From NCBI RefSeq assembly GCF_963853765.1, contig NC_088854.1, positions 16,182,001 to 16,246,000 on the forward strand: 64,000 nucleotides of DNA, in the 5' to 3' direction. The notes under the pieces were generated by a model, which saw only the letters and a list, made by a program, of their open reading frames with translations, was not told where the DNA came from and ran no database searches. A program made the position numbers and the translations under genes. Positions 38,065-45,549 of this stretch are shown here, one piece after another. The stretch's first letter is position 1. The number at the start of each line of letters is the position of its first letter. Source of the DNA: Magallana gigas (lineage: Eukaryota).

Positions 38065-39175
38065 TATCAAAATTAATTTACATTTTCCATTTATTTGTAT
38101 AATATATCATGATTAATCTATAGCTATTCATCTTTGTACTAGCTCATTGTAACTCATTTTACTGTCATTTATTTATTTATAAACCCACAAAAGCTTACTT
38201 TGATTGATATTTTAACTCGGACTTTTCTTCTAATCAATGTACATCGAATCAATGTATTGTAATCATGAACGATTGACGAGTATTTTAAGTAAAGGTATTG
38301 GCATATTGGTTTAGAGAAAAATCTAGTATATATACCGGTTTTTGATTAGAACATCAATATCATGACGGAATATAGAAAATGTACATTAGACCTCTTATTT
38401 ACACAACTTCGGGCAAGATTTTTAAAAATGTTTAATGCCAATGTGAACATATGTATGACAATGTCAATTTTTTGCTGATAACGTATAAATACTGATATTT
38501 ACCTATTACTTTATGTTTGTTGTACAATGCATTATATTTTGTGTATGTAAATTGTTAGTTGGTTTCTCTTTTCTGTGTCTCCCTTATTATACTCAGGTAA
38601 AAATTCAACTTCTCCGAAAACAGAAAAGGAGTCCAACTGTTGAAGATCGACGAAATTTATGTTAATAAATTGTTAGTAAATATTCATTCTCTGTTCCTTA
38701 CATGCCTTAATGATTATTAAAGTATCACTAAAGTAAATATAGTATTAATTTGTAGTATAAAACGTAACATTTTAAAAAGAAAGTTTCTAGATAAAATTTT
38801 ATCTGTAACAATAAAACAAAAAACAATTTAACTTATACTTTTGTGTCTTTACTTTTTATTTCATGTCAATAAAAAGAATTAATGATGCTTTTCCTTGTGT
38901 ATGAATATTAGATTGGATATATTCCACAATATATACTTAACTATAAATTTCATAGATATTACCTCGATTTACAAAATAATTAATCAAAGTCTGATAAAAT
39001 TGAATTACTTCATATAATTTAAAAATATATATAAGAATTAAAAATACTGTTAATGAACAGAAACTTCAAAATTAACCAAATTAACATCAATAATATGTTT
39101 TACTATTGGTATATATTTACTTAAATACAATAAAAAGAAATTAAAGAAATAAAAACATCGTGAAATCCTTTCTGT

Positions 39176-40668
39176 TTACTTCTTACCGGGTTTCATTTGT
39201 TGTTTGGCATGACAAAGCAAACAATTGTTCTGAAACATCTCAAAACAATTTTTGCAATAAAGTGATTTACACTGCTTGCATTTCCTAAAGGAAACATTAC
39301 CACTGGCCTCCTCCTCGCAGCTTATACAAGTTGCCTTTCGCGGTAAACAGATATCCAGGAATGGTTTACAAAAGATGCCAATCGAACTGTACTCTAAGAG
39401 ACCCCGGATAGAAACACGGTTATCGATGTCATGACGACGTATTTGCAGCCGTTGTCTAACCCAGGTGAAGAGCGTCTTGCGTCGATGACGTATCAACTCA
39501 TGAAGCAGACGACATCTTTCCTCCTCTCGGTCAGGATAAAAATGAGAAGTGATGACACGGCGGATTCTATGCGAGTACATTTGAACAAAGACAAGGAACA
39601 GCACACCGCCATACAAAAGCGAGAAAACGGGGATATTACTTTCACTTGGCAGGCTTGGGTTTGGTAAGCAATTGGTTATGTTGAATTCGACGGTCATGTT
39701 AACATTGAGATCTAAATTTGCTATAAGGTCTCGAAAGAAGTTGGCGAGGAATCCGCTGCCCTCCACCGTAATGTTAAGGCTGCTGACACTGGAGGACAGA
39801 ACAGCTACCTGTCCATAGTTACCGATCAGAACAAGGAGGTAATACAGGGCGTAATCAAAACCTATTACGACGACGGCAATCCCAAAATGGGTGAAGAAGG
39901 CGGCAAGGCCTGAAAGAGCCGAGGACAATTCTTGACCGGTAGGAAATGGCAATGAAGTGATGATGTACCTCGAGTGTTCTCTGAACTTCAGTGGAAGGAC
40001 CGACTCCCGTCCGCTTTTCTTGCATTTTTCGTCGTATTCTATAAATTCCGGAGATATGTATATGTTGTCGTAAAAATCTTGCTTCATGTAACGGGTCATG
40101 TATATAACAGACTTAATAAAAAGGAATAGGACTGTCACTCCAAGAGCCTGGCTGATGATGCCAGATATGGTAGTTATGCTGGATACTTTGCTGGTGATGT
40201 CTGCTAACACCTCAGTCACGATTTGCGATGCGGTTTTAGATGATGTTATATTCATGTTAAAGTCAAAGGAAGAGTTAAACCCAAAAACGAATTCATTTTT
40301 AAATTTGTTGAATTCGCTCATGGCTGCAGAAGCTGCCGATGAAAGCTCGCCCGACACAAAGTTTATTGCTTTACAAAGATAGGCTGGAATGTCCAATACA
40401 CTACAGACCACATCAACTTTTCCTAAAATGCCACATATAGAGCTCGCCAATGATCGTTTCCTCCTGAAACGCAAAGTATAACTCATCTTCAAAACCAAAA
40501 TAGAGATATATATTAAGGTACTAAATGTGTACATATGTTTTCAAACATCGGTAACTTTTGAAAGCTATAAGTACAAGTTTTAAGGATATACAGAGCGGAA
40601 AAATGTCAAATGTAAAGTTGATCAACAAGTCAATGAAGTTATTTAACTTACTAGAATCGTTGGTGGTT

Positions 40669-40753
<85 letters not shown>

Positions 40754-42340
40754 TATACCTGTCGCGTTTAACTCTACTCGCAGACAAGGCTCTGTATTCA
40801 CCCTCTTGAGTTACAGAGGGAGACGATAATCTTTCCTTTTCTTCGATTTCCATAACCAATGCATCATATGATCGACTTCGTCCCTCCTTCTTGTTTGCCT
40901 GTTTACCACGCATTGCTGTTGAATTCATTAGGCTATTCGGAGCACCAGACGTGTTTAGGGGGAGAAAACCTATGGCTCGTCTACGTCTTTTCCCCCAAAT
41001 TGACTTCACTGCATTCACCACTGTCTTTGCGGCATCTTCTAGCCATTTCACTGCCGCATTGACAGCGTCCTCACAGTCTTTTTCTGCTTTTTTGATCCCG
41101 TTAATGCACGAAGACTTAGCGTCTGCCATTGTTTTTTCACAAGACTGGATATAAAACATGTGTTCATCATGATAAAAAGACTAACTTCTTTTTAAATATC
41201 AAATCTTTATAACAAGGTTATCCTTTATTGTTCTTTTCCTTTTATCAATAACTATCCAACATTCCATATATATTGCTTTAAAAACATACAATAAAATTTG
41301 GATACGATGAAGGTATTATGAAAAATACTTACAGAAAACACATTGGAAATTTCAGCAGCGATTCTCTCCACTGTACTGAGAAACGACTCTAATTCGCTGA
41401 CAATAGAATTGATAGTATTAACCACAGGTGTTAGAGCATCGACCACAGTTTGAAACACATTCTTCAGTGCTGAGGCGATGCGATATAACGGCTGAAGGAT
41501 CTGTTTGCCTAGCTGCATCAACTGGTTCTGGATCAAGTCAGCCACGCATGCCAAACACCGAGACACTTCTACCGTGTTGTAGGCAATGTTTGATCCCGGT
41601 CCAGACATAAGGAGGATGAAAATGGCGGCGAGGACCAAACCCCTTCCTTGTGAGGTGAAAAGGGATGGCACCACTAGCAACAAGCAGCAGCTTAGGAATC
41701 GACTACCAAAAGCTCCAATCAGGACTAGAAGGAAGGCCACGCCCGTTATAATTCCTGATACTCTGTAGGTGTATCCAAAACTGTAAACGCAAATGGAGAA
41801 AAGGCCACCACAAAACAGCGCTCCCAGCAAAATACCACAGACAATCAAAACGATTCTCCGAATGGTGCGTGAAGTCTTGGGACTCAATGCATTGACTGGG
41901 AATCCTGTCCGAAGTCTCTGTGTAAGCTCCTCTATCAGGTTACCGTTGTTCGTCTGTATTGGTATTTCGCTCATTTCAAACTGACCAGGCTGGTCGTACC
42001 TCCCTTGTTCTGCTTTCTTATCTCCTTTCTCTAGCAGTGGTGTTTTCTGTTTTAAAAGATTTGGGGTTTCGTCATCGCTATCGTTCTGATCTTCGGGAAT
42101 AATCATGGTGGTACGATGTGGATTTTTAGGAAGCTCTGGGGACTGTCTAGAATACTCAGTGTAGGAAACAGGAAAGAACCCCGTCTCGTCGGTCCCTACT
42201 TTCCGCCCTAGAGCCCATTCATTGTTCAGAGGCTTTACATGCGTTATGTAATCTCCTTTTCGGAGTTCCAGATTTTGAGGTGCTGATGACGGGTAGTCTT
42301 TGATAACTTTGTACTCACGTGACAAGTCTTGTTCTGTCAT
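39176..42340 (-). CDS. DC-STAMP/DCST-family multi-pass membrane protein with N-terminal SH3 and C-terminal C4C4 RING-like motif (~899 aa, 3 exons)
   Basis: Exons 42340-41333, 41144-40759 and 40481-39176. Features: SH3 (YKVIKDY...LELRKGD...EWALG...GFFPVSY); TM block with CCLLLVVPSLFTSQGRG...GPGSNI; DC-STAMP core YMTRYMKQDFYDNIYIS...LPL; CLPNP; HFYPDRE.ER..L; CxxC x4 tail. The exon 3 acceptor was chosen by phase and is less certain. Confidence 0.85.
40673..40751. repeat. (TA)n microsatellite, ~39 units, in DCST intron 2
   Basis: Directly visible. Confidence 0.98.
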
Positions 42341-43673
42341 GGCTTTTTCTATATGCGGAAATTGTTAAAACATGATATCTTTTGAAATGGTGGATTAAAA
42401 GTAAATTTAAAATTAATAATGGTTATTATATAATTAATTCCATGCATTAAATGACAATAAAGACAGTGCATGTACTTTATATAAAGATAAATACCTTCGT
42501 CCTGGCATCAAGAAAGGTTTTAGTGTAAAAAAAAAAAAAAAAAAGCCCGCAATACGTGCTGAACGGATATTGTGTTTCCGGACTTTAACGGAAGTACTGA
42601 CTTTTTAACATGCATCTTACACAGAATAAAGATTAATGTAAATATTGGAGGTATTTTTCTTCTCTTATATACCACAACTCTGGACGTTGTGAAAAACAAT
42701 TTGATTATATATTTGTGAAAAAGAATTTGATTATATATTTGTGAAAAAGCACTTGATTATATTTTTCTCAAACTTTATTTTGATTTCTTTAAGGGGTTGT
42801 TTTCCTTCTATGTACATGTATTTTTATGATGTATACTGTAAACGAACATAGTAAAAGCACATACAAGTAGCTCATGACATGAGGGCATTTTTCAAAGATA
42901 CTTTTTTCCTCTTAAAACATTATTTATTATATTAAAATAAATTATAGGAAACTTGGAAAATAAATCAAAAGTTAACGATACAGGTGTACAGATGCATGAT
43001 TATTATGCAGTAAGCAAGAACTTCAGATCATATTTATGATAACGTGTATAAAATGTCTCTTTGAATATGTATTATGATCTTAATCATCTCAATAATGGCA
43101 GTTATATGCTAGTAAGTACTGTTTTACTATCATTGCTACACATACTGACAGAACAGAACTGTTTATAATTATTTCATTAAACACATATTTTTAATTTGTA
43201 CAGAATTGTTAATTTTTTATTTTACTGTGATTTATCTGTACATGCAAAACTTAACATTGATTACACTGTTAGGACAAAATGATTGTATACACAAAATTAC
43301 TACCAAAAAAATTAAAAGACCAATTCTTCATTTTATTTTCAACATACGATAAACACGAATGCATTACATATGTATTTGTACATTAACATGGCATACTATT
43401 TGGTTTGATCTGTATAAAGCAGTGTATTGCAAATTGGTCAAACCCATGGATTACAGGCAAGCACGTCACTGGCATTTGGTTAACACATGTACATATATCG
43501 TTATCATATAAAGACATACAATGTATATACAGGAAATATACTGCTTTCAGTCACAAAAGTTTCACGTTTTACAACAAACTTGGACAGAACACTAAACGTT
43601 CACGGTGACCATGATCACGTGATTCACAATCAATCTAGTCCCTCTTGCGTTTGTTTTCGCGAAATTCCATCAT

Positions 43674-45549
43674 TCAGATGCTGGGGTTTGCTGACTTGGC
43701 TTTCCACAGCTTCTTCCGTTCTATCAGCCCAGTCAGCATATCATTAAACAGTCTATCCACACCCTCTCCAGAGGCGGCAGAAGTCTCATAGTATCTAGAA
43801 ATGCCGAACATTGTGTTAAAGACTTGCAAAGTTTTTAGGTAGCATTACCGTGAGGAATCAGTCTTTGTTTTGCTTCAACATTCCGAATAGATTCACCATA
43901 ACAAAGCTGTTGCAAAATATTGTTTGAACCATACATGTATAGATGTATAATGTATATATAAATGTATTAAGATGAAACGAAATGAAAACCTTCATAGTTT
44001 CTTACTTTGCGTTGTTTTGCTGGGCCCATTTTTTAGAATCCTCTGATTTAACAACTCTTTTTGCTTTCAAATCGATCTGAAAAATAAAACATTGTAAATA
44101 TACTACTGATTCATGTAAGTTATATTGATAAATTTTTTAAAAATCCCCAATTAAATGCGGTTGATTGTCTCTAGAGGGAAATACCTTGTTGGCAACGACA
44201 ATAAGCTCGGGGTTTCCGGATGAGTATTTTTGCACTTCTTTCAGCCAATTTTCCATATTTTCAAATGTTGACAAATTTGTGACATCAAAAACAAGAAATA
44301 TGGCGTCTGTGTTGATATATAGTTCATTCCTAACATCGATGTATTCTGGACTGCCAGAGAGATCCCATAGATGTACTCTTACTTTGAAAATTAAGAAGAA
44401 ATTATACAATGTAAAGTATATATGTATTATACATTATTTTTTACAAAATCATTTCAGATATCGAGAACATTTCCAAATCGTTTTATACACAATATTTTTC
44501 CTGTCTATTTGATGTAGCAGATGTGGGGAATTTCTTATTTCAGTTTGCATTTTTCAATTCCATTTTAACTATCATTTTGTGCATAACTCAACCAAGCAAG
44601 GGTAGGTACATCTATATACTTACAGTCTACCCCCTCCACGTGCTGAATTTTAAACCCATAATCTACACCAACTGTTGGCTGGTACCCACCGCTAAACTGT
44701 AAAAACAAATTTACTTTGAAATCATAAGACTTCGTGGTGGCTCAATTCATGGGTACTACTCATCAACGAATTAACATCCTTGACGAATTATTAAATTATG
44801 GCATTAAAGCCACGTTTTCAATTGTAGGTATAACGTTATAAGATGATACGCGAAATTAAGCCCCCCGAACCTGTACATTAAAATTTAAGCAATCCATGAA
44901 AATTGGCCCCCGAGAATTTTAATGATTCCCCAGTATATGAATGAGATAAACAAACAACCTAAATGGTACATTGATTATTATCATTACGTTTTTATAACAA
45001 TAGTGTGAAGTAATTGTTCAATTGCATAGTAGATCTATGTCCACAATGCAACATTTTTACATAAATAAACAATTTCTTACTTTGCTTTCGCAAAAATGTT
45101 TGATAAGACAGGTTTTCCCAACGCATCCATTTCCAATGCCTACAACCTGCAACAGAAAGTGGTCTATATAGTTATTCATGCAACCATGCATATATATATA
45201 CATAATTTTTCAAAAATGTATTAATACAATAATTAATAAAAATGCAGAACCTACAAATATGGAAGTGAAATTAGTTTTTGGTCTTTCTTTCGCTATTGTT
45301 GCGTTTTATTTTGCATCGACACATCCGTACATGGGATGTTATCTACATCACTTTGACATGGGATGTCTAAGTTGGATAAATACATGTAGGCCTACTAGAG
45401 AAATAACAATTAATTTATAGATTCTTTTGTAACCATTTAGTGTTCGCCATTTTCTATAAATCGACAGTTATGTACTATACCTTTATCCACACCAAAGAAT
45501 TCACGGCATCCTGTGCATTTTTAGTCAAATGGCCTGGTTTTCTGTCCAT
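43674..45549 (-). CDS. RJL-family (DNAJC27/RBJ-like) small GTPase lacking the J domain (198 aa, 6 exons)
   Basis: Exons 45549-45481, 45146-45081, 44696-44624, 44381-44185, 44076-44006 and 43794-43674. G1 GNGCVGKT, G2 PTVGVDYG, G3 WDLSGS (no Gln), VRNELY, G4 NKID, G5 ETSA. The gene stops at KSANPSI* with no J domain and no CAAX. Confidence 0.88.

What the first reader, a model, noticed from the sequence alone, without database searches (positions are those of the whole stretch)
42110..42340. SH3 domain fused in-exon to a DC-STAMP/DCST protein, followed by its own PxxPxR ligand
Seen: the first 65 codons of the 1,008-nt exon 1 encode a canonical SH3. It is followed within ~10 aa by PELPKNPHR (class II PxxPxR = PKNPHR) and then, with no intron, by the DCST TM block. 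Known: DCST1/2, Drosophila Sneaky and C. elegans SPE-42/SPE-49 are needed for sperm-egg fusion or activation, and DC-/OC-STAMP for macrophage fusion. To my knowledge none of these has an SH3. Inference: an SH3-TM-RING architecture that could couple a fusion-competence protein directly to actin regulators, possibly auto-inhibited by the adjacent proline motif.
Basis: partly seen in the sequence, partly recalled or inferred. Interest (0 to 1): 0.7.

Follow-up and report, generated by a model that had tools for sequence, protein, structure and literature searches.

The report
SH3-tipped DCST membrane protein, lophotrochozoan clade
A mollusc gene really does encode a sperm-fusion-type (DC-STAMP/DCST) membrane protein that begins with an SH3 adaptor domain; this design is shared by many molluscs and a brachiopod but I found no paper describing it, and the proposed self-inhibiting proline motif is not conserved.

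Summary
Confirmed. On the minus strand, a three-coding-exon gene (42340..39176) encodes an 893-aa protein. It has an N-terminal SH3 (residues 8-63), a disordered linker, three TM helices, a helical ectodomain stalk, the DC_STAMP domain and a C-terminal Cys-rich RING-like tail.

SH3 and TM block lie in one uninterrupted exon. RNA contigs cover the SH3 codons and splice them to an upstream non-coding exon, with an in-frame stop before the ATG, so transcripts start upstream of the SH3.

The design is not unique. SH3+DC_STAMP proteins occur in Pinctada, Mytilus, Mizuhopecten, Mya, Mercenaria, Patella, Haliotis and the brachiopod Lingula, filed as "DCST2-like", "sneaky-like" or "SH3 domain-containing". 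They form a strongly supported clade. It is separate from canonical DCST2 and DCST1, and this genome carries genes of both those types as well. Mammalian, amphioxus, insect and nematomorph DCSTs lack SH3. No paper I could search mentions the fusion.

Auto-inhibition is unsupported. PKNPHR is lost in the nearest relative and absent in most orthologues, its AlphaFold pLDDT is below 50, and the acidic RT-loop residue of this SH3 is Asn. The likeliest role is recruiting a cytoplasmic partner in trans. Function is untested.

The parts
42495..42512 (-). 3' end of an upstream non-coding (5'UTR) exon; its start is not defined. Contains an out-of-frame uATG at 42508.
   Evidence: 16 loose letters of RNA contig X1 record 7 beyond 42350 match 42497-42512. 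Script check of the junction and frames.
42349..42494 (-). 5'UTR intron (GT at 42494-93, AG at 42350-49)
41333..42348 (-). First coding exon. The ATG is at 42340 and 336 codons follow: SH3, linker, TM1-3 and the start of the stalk. An in-frame stop lies upstream in the spliced leader.
   Evidence: ORF. RNA contigs 41333-41893, 41741-41970 and 41897-42350. Frame analysis.
42152..42319 (-). SH3 domain, residues 8-63
   Evidence: Pfam SH3_1 E=2.2e-7. AF2 pLDDT 90-96. Foldseek SH3 hits with TM 0.8-0.9. Profile hits to LASP1, sorbin and nebulin SH3.
42113..42139 (-). PELPKNPHR (residues 68-76). Class II PKNPHR overlaps class I RQSPELP. Only the PELP...HRTTMI island is shared with the nearest relative.
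   Evidence: pLDDT below 50.
41945..42151 (-). Disordered, fast-evolving cytoplasmic linker, residues 64-132
   Evidence: pLDDT about 40. 32% identity to the nearest relative.
41660..41944 (-). Juxtamembrane helix (residues 133-144) and TM helices 1-3 (154-186, 192-212, 214-227)
   Evidence: AF2 secondary structure. Hydropathy. Conserved block in alignment A2.
41333..41659 (-). Start of the long ectodomain stalk helix (residues 228-336)
   Evidence: A single helix 230-335 in the AF2 model.
41145..41332 (-). Intron 1 (188 nt, GT..AG)
   Evidence: Joint 41144|41333 in RNA contig X1.
40759..41144 (-). Second coding exon: ectodomain insert with Cys, N-glycosylation sequons and multibasic RX[KR]R motifs
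   Evidence: Model. Joints. Motifs.
40464..40758 (-). Intron 2, holding a (TA)n microsatellite
   Evidence: X14 record 12 joins 40760 to 40464, and X1 has a loose end at 40466. Sequence.
39176..40463 (-). Third coding exon: rest of the ectodomain, TM4-6, cytoplasmic tail and stop codon at 39176-39178
   Evidence: ORF. RNA contig 39174-40466.
39500..40072 (-). DC_STAMP domain (PF07782)
   Evidence: E=3.2e-46. Same place in the genome search.
39209..39370 (-). C-terminal Cys-rich, non-canonical RING-like region (CxxC pairs at residues 844/847, 860/863, 868/871, 879/882)
   Evidence: Cys positions. Family feature described in PMC8989947. No Pfam RING hit.

Best explanation
The locus is an expressed gene for an 893-aa multi-pass membrane protein of the DC-STAMP/DCST family.

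Its cytoplasmic N terminus is a genuine SH3 domain, fused in the same exon to the first three transmembrane helices. Its cytoplasmic C terminus carries the family's non-canonical RING.

It belongs to a clade found so far only in molluscs and a brachiopod, in which the N-terminal SH3 is the ancestral state. That clade sits beside, not inside, the canonical DCST2 and DCST1 groups, and this genome has genes of both those types as well.

Shown here: the architecture, its transcription, its conservation and its phyletic spread.

Inferred: the SH3 lies in the cytoplasm next to the RING tail. It works in trans, tethering a proline-motif partner to the DCST complex. That partner could be a cytoskeletal or adaptor protein, a RING substrate, or the tail of a partner DCST subunit. 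The adjacent proline motif is not a conserved auto-inhibitor.

A role in gamete or other cell-cell interaction is assumed from the family and was not tested.
For: - Domains: SH3 and DC_STAMP.
- One exon and one ORF.
- Splice joints, 5' leader and an in-frame upstream stop.
- SH3 plus DC_STAMP confirmed by Pfam in 7 full-length named relatives, named.
- 70 of 131 retrieved proteins that carry the TM block also carry the N-terminal SH3.
- The SH3 clade has 100/99 support. The genome's own C1a gene groups with ecdysozoan DCST2 at 99/95.
- P0114 in the canonical group is amphioxus DCST2-like.
- The C-terminal half scores E=4e-43 to bat DCST2 and 1e-13 to DCST1.
- The SH3 is conserved at 73% against 32% for the linker.
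- W42, P57 and G54 are near-invariant across the family.
- OC-STAMP termini are intracellular (PMC4456411).
- The proline motif is not conserved and is disordered in the model.
Against: - No ligand, tissue or phenotype is known.
- In this oyster-like lineage two ligand-contact residues are non-canonical (Lys14, Asn23). Binding may therefore be atypical or weakened.
- 7 of 21 clade members lack a detected SH3, so the domain is dispensable for some paralogues. Some of these may be truncated gene models: P0012, which has an SH3, is the close sister of the 'SH3-less' Potamilus model.
- The C1a and C1b sequences in the tree are partial, pieced from tblastn segments.
- The AU test does not reject C1a plus the SH3 clade as one group (p=0.063). 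The clade may be a fast-evolving lophotrochozoan duplicate of DCST2.
Confidence: 0.6

Rival explanations
1. Auto-inhibition: the PKNPHR/RQSPELP motif eight residues after the SH3 folds back into its groove and blocks it until a signal releases it.
For: - A class I and a class II consensus overlap right after the domain.
- Such a motif within the first 16 linker residues arises in only 2.5% of shuffles.
- The short island PELP...HRTTMI is the one conserved patch of the linker between this gene and its nearest relative.
Against: - The second proline and the class II and class I registers are lost in the nearest relative (PELPNSSHR).
- Most orthologues have no PxxP in the linker.
- AlphaFold gives pLDDT below 50 for residues 70-131.
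- The acidic RT-loop residue that pairs with the ligand's Arg is Asn here.
Confidence: 0.08
2. POSH-like logic: the SH3 is a substrate- or adaptor-docking module for the E3 ligase activity of the C-terminal RING. The protein would be a membrane-anchored SH3-RING ubiquitin ligase.
For: - SH3 and RING are predicted on the same (cytoplasmic) side.
- The SH3 profile hits SH3RF1/SH3RF2 SH3 domains at E of about 1e-11.
- DCST1 is named an E3 ligase by databases, and its ligase activity is cited in PMC8830517.
Against: - The RING is non-canonical and gets no Pfam RING hit.
- Ligase activity has not been shown for any DCST2-like protein that I read about.
- Better SH3 matches are to cytoskeletal scaffolds.
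Confidence: 0.15
3. Subunit bridging: the SH3 binds a proline-rich cytoplasmic tail of another DCST subunit, by analogy with the DCST1/DCST2 heterodimer. The candidate is the SH3-less paralogue on contig C5, whose tail before TM1 contains LPPTDPLPPEEPQIPP.
For: - The C5 paralogue belongs to the same clade, lacks an SH3 within 10.7 kb upstream, and has a proline-rich N-tail.
- DCST1 and DCST2 interact in vertebrates (PMC11052572).
- A sub-clade of unnamed relatives has Pro-rich linkers of 300-400 residues with many PxxP motifs.
Against: - It was not tested here.
- The C5 tail has no basic anchor residue.
- The start codon of the C5 gene was not found.
Confidence: 0.1
4. Artefact: the SH3 belongs to another gene or to an untranslated leader, and the fusion is only an ORF coincidence.
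For: A short uORF (uATG at 42508) overlaps the main ATG.
Against: - It is one exon and one frame, with no stop for 336 codons.
- RNA contigs are collinear.
- The same N-terminal SH3 occurs in more than 40 clusters at 50% identity or less.
- The SH3 is conserved as strongly as the membrane core.
Confidence: 0.02

Closest known systems
DCST2 (vertebrate DC-STAMP domain-containing 2; worm SPE-42; fly DCST2)
   Same: It shares the N-terminal three-helix 'Dcst2' block, the helical ectodomain, the DC_STAMP domain and the C-terminal Cys-rich RING-like tail. The best named matches are bat DCST2 at E=4e-43, and databases call the clade 'DCST2-like'.
   Different: It has an N-terminal SH3, which is absent from mammalian, amphioxus, insect and nematomorph DCST2. 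It forms a separate clade, and this genome also has a multi-exon gene in the canonical DCST2 group. The gene is intron-poor, with three coding exons.
DCST1 / Drosophila Sneaky / C. elegans SPE-49
   Same: Same family and membrane plan. Some clade members are machine-named 'sneaky-like' or 'E3 ubiquitin-protein ligase DCST1'.
   Different: It is much more distant (E=1e-13 against 4e-43). The genome has its own DCST1-like gene on C1 at about 69.96 Mb. DCST1 has no SH3.
DC-STAMP / OC-STAMP (vertebrate osteoclast and macrophage fusion)
   Same: Both carry the DC_STAMP domain. Their experimentally supported topology, with both termini inside the cell, gives the basis for placing the SH3 in the cytoplasm (PMC4456411).
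   Different: They are vertebrate-specific paralogues (PMC8989947) with no SH3.
SH3 domains of LASP1, nebulin/nebulette, sorbin (CAP) and vinexin
   Same: These are the closest solved SH3 sequences to the family profile (E=6e-18 to 7e-14). They share the 'GW-x-x-G' core in place of the 'WW' pair.
   Different: They sit in soluble actin-associated scaffolds, usually at the C terminus. Here the domain is at the N terminus of a multi-pass membrane protein.
SH3RF1/POSH family (RING plus SH3 E3 ligases)
   Same: SH3 and RING are combined in one polypeptide, and SH3RF SH3 domains are among the profile hits.
   Different: POSH proteins are soluble, carry a canonical N-terminal RING and have four SH3 domains. 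They are not homologous outside the SH3.

Membership tests
SH3 domain (PF00018) | Sequence match above the curated Pfam threshold | tested here: met
   30.8 bits against a cut-off of 22.9, E=2.2e-7, full-length model match 1-48.
SH3 domain (PF00018) | Five-stranded beta-barrel fold | tested here: met
   AF2 pLDDT 90-96 with strands at 9-12, 31-38, 42-47, 53-57 and 61-64. Foldseek TM 0.8-0.9 to solved SH3 domains.
SH3 domain (PF00018) | Canonical PxxP-binding surface: two ALYDY tyrosines, an acidic RT-loop residue, the Trp, and the Pro and Tyr of the 3-10 helix | tested here: inconclusive
   Y16, W42, P57 and Y60 are present. The first Tyr is Lys14. The acidic RT-loop residue is Asn23, where 19 of 23 relatives have D/E. 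Binding itself is not testable here.
DC-STAMP/DCST family (PF07782) | DC_STAMP domain | tested here: met
   E=3.2e-46, 158 bits, model positions 1-191 of 191.
DC-STAMP/DCST family (PF07782) | Multi-pass topology with both termini intracellular | not testable with these tools
   Three N-terminal helices and three later hydrophobic segments fit a 3+3 plan. Orientation is inferred from OC-STAMP experiments.
DCST1/2 subfamily | C-terminal non-canonical RING with invariant cysteines | tested here: met
   Four CxxC pairs in residues 844-882. The feature is described in PMC8989947. No Pfam RING hit, as expected for a non-canonical RING.
Canonical DCST2 orthogroup | Groups with vertebrate and ecdysozoan DCST2 in a tree, as the genome's DCST2 representative | tested here: inconclusive
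   It falls in a separate clade with 100/99 support, while the genome's own C1a gene joins ecdysozoan DCST2 at 99/95. The AU test does not reject C1a plus the SH3 clade as one group (p=0.063).
Auto-inhibited SH3 (intramolecular PxxP ligand) | Conserved adjacent ligand motif that docks on the domain | tested here: not met
   The motif is not conserved and the segment has pLDDT below 50.

The most novel reading that the evidence does not exclude
Lophotrochozoans possess a third, expanded DCST lineage beside DCST1 and DCST2. Its founding innovation was an N-terminal cytoplasmic SH3, and in pteriomorph bivalves and gastropods a furin-cleavable ectodomain insert was added. Through the SH3, the otherwise mechanistically opaque DCST machinery is wired to cytoskeletal or signalling partners in sperm or in somatic cells such as hemocytes. 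That would contradict the published statement that invertebrates have solely DCST1/2, and it would give an experimentally tractable handle (an SH3 with findable ligands) on what DCST proteins do inside the cell.
Probability: 0.3. Interest if true: 0.7.

Novelty: new variant of a known kind. Interest (0 to 1): 0.5.

Why it matters
DCST1 and DCST2 are the only sperm fertilization factors known to be shared by vertebrates, flies and worms, yet what they do biochemically, especially on the cytoplasmic side, is unknown.

A natural, conserved DCST variant carrying a standard peptide-binding module offers a direct route to intracellular partners through pull-downs and peptide arrays.

It also shows that the family's history in invertebrates is richer than 'DCST1 plus DCST2'. 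Broadcast-spawning molluscs, where fertilization proteins are classic study objects, carry an expanded extra clade.

The finding is moderate rather than high in interest. The sequences are already public under automatic names, domain accretion is common, and no function was tested.

Tried and rejected
- Complex prediction of SH3 (residues 1-66) against the linker (64-100) gave no verdict (score 0.01, controls not run). It counts neither for nor against binding.
- The protein-atlas search with the first coding exon gave no usable hit.
- The search for homologous proteins with the Mytilus orthologue's N-terminal region returned only Mytilus proteins, because of word-index sensitivity.
- A search of solved structures with the C-terminal half found no DCST relative.
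- The look-up of encoding contigs for P0019 and P0114 gave no DNA or taxonomy. A sub-clade of about 23 unnamed representatives, with an SH3 and a Pro-rich linker of 300-400 residues, therefore stays unassigned to a phylum.
- Raw RNA reads of run X20 gave no reads on the gene at about 1% sampling, so no 5' end or expression level could be read. Run names are coded, so tissue is unknown.
- Literature searches for DCST together with SH3 or molluscs found nothing relevant. One badly posed search was uninformative.
- I rejected the idea that the C5 paralogue hides an SH3 exon. There was no hit at E<=1 in 10.7 kb upstream, and none near any other DC_STAMP locus in the genome-wide search.
- I could not submit the spliced 893-aa protein to the database tools, because it has no reference. 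Whether this genome's own annotated protein is in public databases was therefore not checked.

Full report
**What is at the coordinates**

The feature lies on the minus strand. A 362-codon ORF (42340..41252) begins at the ATG at 42340.

Pfam finds SH3_1 at residues 11-58: E=2.2e-7, 30.8 bits, cut-off 22.9, full-length model match. SH3_9 and SH3_2 match more weakly.

PELPKNPHR is residues 68-76. PKNPHR fits class II PxxPx[RK], and the overlapping RQSPELP fits class I [RK]xxPxxP. The frame then runs without a stop into hydrophobic helices.

**Gene model and transcription**

I modelled three coding exons: 42340..41333, 41144..40759 and 40463..39176. Together they give 893 aa. The third exon holds a complete DC_STAMP domain (E=3.2e-46) and a Cys-rich tail with four CxxC pairs.

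Contigs of public runs laid on 38600-44000 gave these results:
- The joint 41144|41333 has GT..AG ends on the minus strand.
- One RNA-library contig spans the 40760/40464 joint. This equals my 40759/40463 model within one ambiguous base.
- There is no coverage of introns or of the intergenic DNA between 42401 and 43305.
- Coverage of the first coding exon is collinear: 41333-41893, 41741-41970, 41897-42350, 41969-42239 and 42187-42349.

The contig that ends at 42350 carries 16 further letters that match 42497-42512. The script check shows a GT..AG intron at 42349-42494.

In the spliced leader the main frame has a stop before the ATG. The protein thus starts at 42340 and the SH3 is its very N terminus.

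A 15-codon out-of-frame uORF (uATG at 42508, inside the RNA contig) overlaps the main ATG.

**The SH3 is a real domain**

With an alignment of 23 family SH3s, AlphaFold2 gives pLDDT 90 and five strands. In the whole-exon model the SH3 reaches pLDDT of about 96. Foldseek against the PDB returns only SH3 domains at the top (Hck, Src, CD2AP, cortactin, POSH) with TM 0.8-0.9.

A profile of the family's SH3 best matches the SH3s of sorbin/CAP, LASP1, vinexin, nebulette/nebulin and p47phox, at E=6e-18 to about 1e-13.

Against the nearest relative (about 70% identical overall), identity by region is as follows:

| Region | Identity |
|---|---|
| SH3 | 73% |
| Linker | 32% |
| Membrane core | 75% |
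| Stalk | 75% |

The SH3 is therefore constrained like the core.

'Canonical' needs one qualification. Y16, W42, P57 and Y60 are in place, but the first ALYDY tyrosine is Lys14. The RT-loop acidic residue is Asn23 in this gene and its nearest relative, while 19 of 23 relatives have D/E. From general SH3 knowledge, that residue pairs with the ligand's basic anchor.

**Topology**

The exon model shows:
- a disordered linker (residues 70-131, pLDDT below 50);
- a short conserved helix (133-144);
- three TM helices (154-186, 192-212, 214-227);
- one long helix (230-335).

The segment after TM3 aligns with what Witwicka et al. place in extracellular loop 2 of OC-STAMP. [quoted passage not shown] Three further hydrophobic segments follow in the third exon, and N-glycosylation sequons and cysteines lie between them.

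I therefore infer a 3+3 plan, with the SH3 and the RING both in the cytoplasm. This is an inference from homology, not a test.

**How widespread the architecture is**

A full HMMER scan of 1.84 billion cluster representatives with the 336-aa exon gave 592 hits at E<=1e-3. Ten of the top hits match SH3 and TM block in a single stretch.

Pfam confirms SH3 in all ten. It confirms SH3 plus DC_STAMP in the seven full-length ones.

The source names cover these taxa:
- Pinctada imbricata (three genes)
- Mytilus galloprovincialis, M. edulis, M. trossulus and M. californianus
- Mizuhopecten yessoensis
- Mya arenaria
- Mercenaria mercenaria
- Patella vulgata
- Haliotis asinina, H. cracherodii and H. rufescens
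- the brachiopod Lingula anatina (two genes)

[quoted passage not shown] UniProt calls several 'SH3 domain-containing protein'.

With a family SH3 HMM, 70 of the 131 retrieved proteins that carry the TM block also carry the N-terminal SH3. Two Mytilus paralogues carry two SH3s.

Mammalian DCST2 and DCST1, amphioxus, insect and nematomorph DCST2-like proteins have none.

**Where the clade sits**

This genome has four DC_STAMP loci:
- this gene on C2;
- a close paralogue on C5;
- two multi-exon genes on C1.

A genome-wide search with the family SH3 profile finds the DCST-type SH3 only here (82 bits; the next hits score at most 56 bits and lie elsewhere). No SH3 lies within 10.7 kb upstream of the C5 paralogue.

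In maximum-likelihood trees of the C-terminal half:
- All mollusc and Lingula sequences, with one unnamed sequence (unk128/P0128), form one clade (100/99). SH3-bearing and SH3-less members are mixed within it: 14 with and 7 without, a minimum of 7 state changes.
- The C1 gene at about 46.96 Mb (partial, pieced from tblastn segments) groups with nematomorph and insect DCST2-like proteins (99/95), alongside amphioxus and mammalian DCST2.
- The C1 gene at about 69.96 Mb is DCST1-like.

The genome thus holds a DCST1 type, a canonical DCST2 type, and two members of a third group to which the SH3 belongs.

Because Lingula and molluscs share the SH3 at the same position, a single gain at or before their common ancestor, followed by several losses or truncated gene models, is the simplest reading.

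The AU test does not reject uniting the C1 DCST2-like gene with the SH3 clade (p=0.063). The clade may therefore be a lophotrochozoan duplicate of DCST2 that diverged fast.

Noda et al. state that 'invertebrates have solely DCST1/2' (PMC8989947). The extra clade qualifies that statement.

**The auto-inhibition idea**

- In the nearest relative the segment reads PELPNSSHR. The PELP core and the following HRTTMI are kept, but neither the class I nor the class II register survives.
- Mytilus, Patella, Haliotis, Mizuhopecten and one Pinctada paralogue have no PxxP in the linker. A few others (Pinctada a, Lingula b) have unrelated class I or II motifs.
- In shuffles of this linker a class I or II motif appears in 18% of cases, and within the first 16 residues in 2.5%.
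- AlphaFold leaves the motif at pLDDT of about 40.
- Together with Asn23, this gives no support for a conserved intramolecular lock. A lineage-specific one is not excluded.

**Likely mechanism**

I commit to trans recruitment. A cytoplasmic SH3 on a flexible 90-residue tether, beside the RING tail, brings a proline-motif partner to the DCST complex.

Three versions are ranked in the rival explanations: a cytoskeletal or adaptor partner, a docking module for the RING ligase, and bridging to a Pro-rich partner subunit.
- The cytoskeletal or adaptor version is hinted at by the LASP1, nebulin and sorbin likeness of the SH3.
- The bridging version rests on the N-tail of the C5 paralogue before TM1, which contains LPPTDPLPPEEPQIPP.

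None of these was testable here.

Whether the protein acts in sperm is unknown. One mussel study lists a 'DCST2' contig as up-regulated in hemocytes (PMC7023338), so somatic roles for the expanded clade are possible. That contig was not matched to this clade.

**Novelty**

The sequences are public and machine-annotated, so the architecture is visible in databases. Full-text searches for DCST1/DCST2 with SH3, DC-STAMP with SH3 domain and mollusc, and DCST2 with Mollusca found no paper that mentions it. A review of DCST evolution does not contain the word SH3.

I class it as a new variant of a known kind, of moderate interest.

Noticed in passing
window 40759-41144 and the start of 40463 downward (model residues 389-392, 460-468): The ectodomain insert encoded by the second coding exon carries furin-type multibasic motifs (RRRR, RVKR, RRKR). 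One or two RX[KR]R motifs at the equivalent insert (pairs in Pinctada a, Mytilus, both Mizuhopecten paralogues and Patella; one in Pinctada b and Haliotis). They are absent in heterodont bivalves, Potamilus, Lingula and canonical DCST2. This suggests convertase processing of the ectodomain.
   Followed up: partly
window 42464-42508 across the 5'UTR intron to 42317: A 15-codon out-of-frame uORF starts at the uATG at 42508, which is present in the RNA contig. It overlaps the main ATG and has a weak start context.
   Followed up: partly
window 40657-40759: A long (TA)n microsatellite lies in intron 2, directly after the donor site. The read tool skipped it as a repeat.
   Followed up: no
L009:4231-4812 (G000 C5 about 47.729 Mb): The SH3-less paralogue has a proline-rich tail (LPPTDPLPPEEPQIPP) just before TM1 and no in-frame ATG in that exon, so its start lies in an exon I did not find. 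It is a possible SH3 ligand.
   Followed up: partly
G000 C1:46952000-46969999 (L020, L021) and C1:69957000-69976999 (L022, L023): These are multi-exon canonical DCST2-like and DCST1-like genes of the same genome. Only partial models were pieced together from tblastn segments.
   Followed up: partly
P0177 and P0178 (Mytilus californianus and M. galloprovincialis): Paralogues with two tandem N-terminal SH3 domains ahead of the DCST block.
   Followed up: no
P0019, P0025, P0040, P0044, P0058, P0070, P0082, P0102, P0124 and others: A sub-clade of about 23 unnamed representatives from environmental or run assemblies has an SH3, then a Pro-rich linker of 300-400 residues (up to 16% Pro, many class I and II motifs), then the DCST TM block. 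The organism is unknown.
   Followed up: partly
window 43389-43794: A highly covered, spliced exon of the neighbouring gene lies about 1 kb upstream of this gene's leader. No contig links the two genes.
   Followed up: no
Ly6/uPAR proteins (Bouncer, SPACA4) are fertilization factors elsewhere, so their nearness to a DCST gene may be worth a look. It may equally be coincidence.
   Followed up: no
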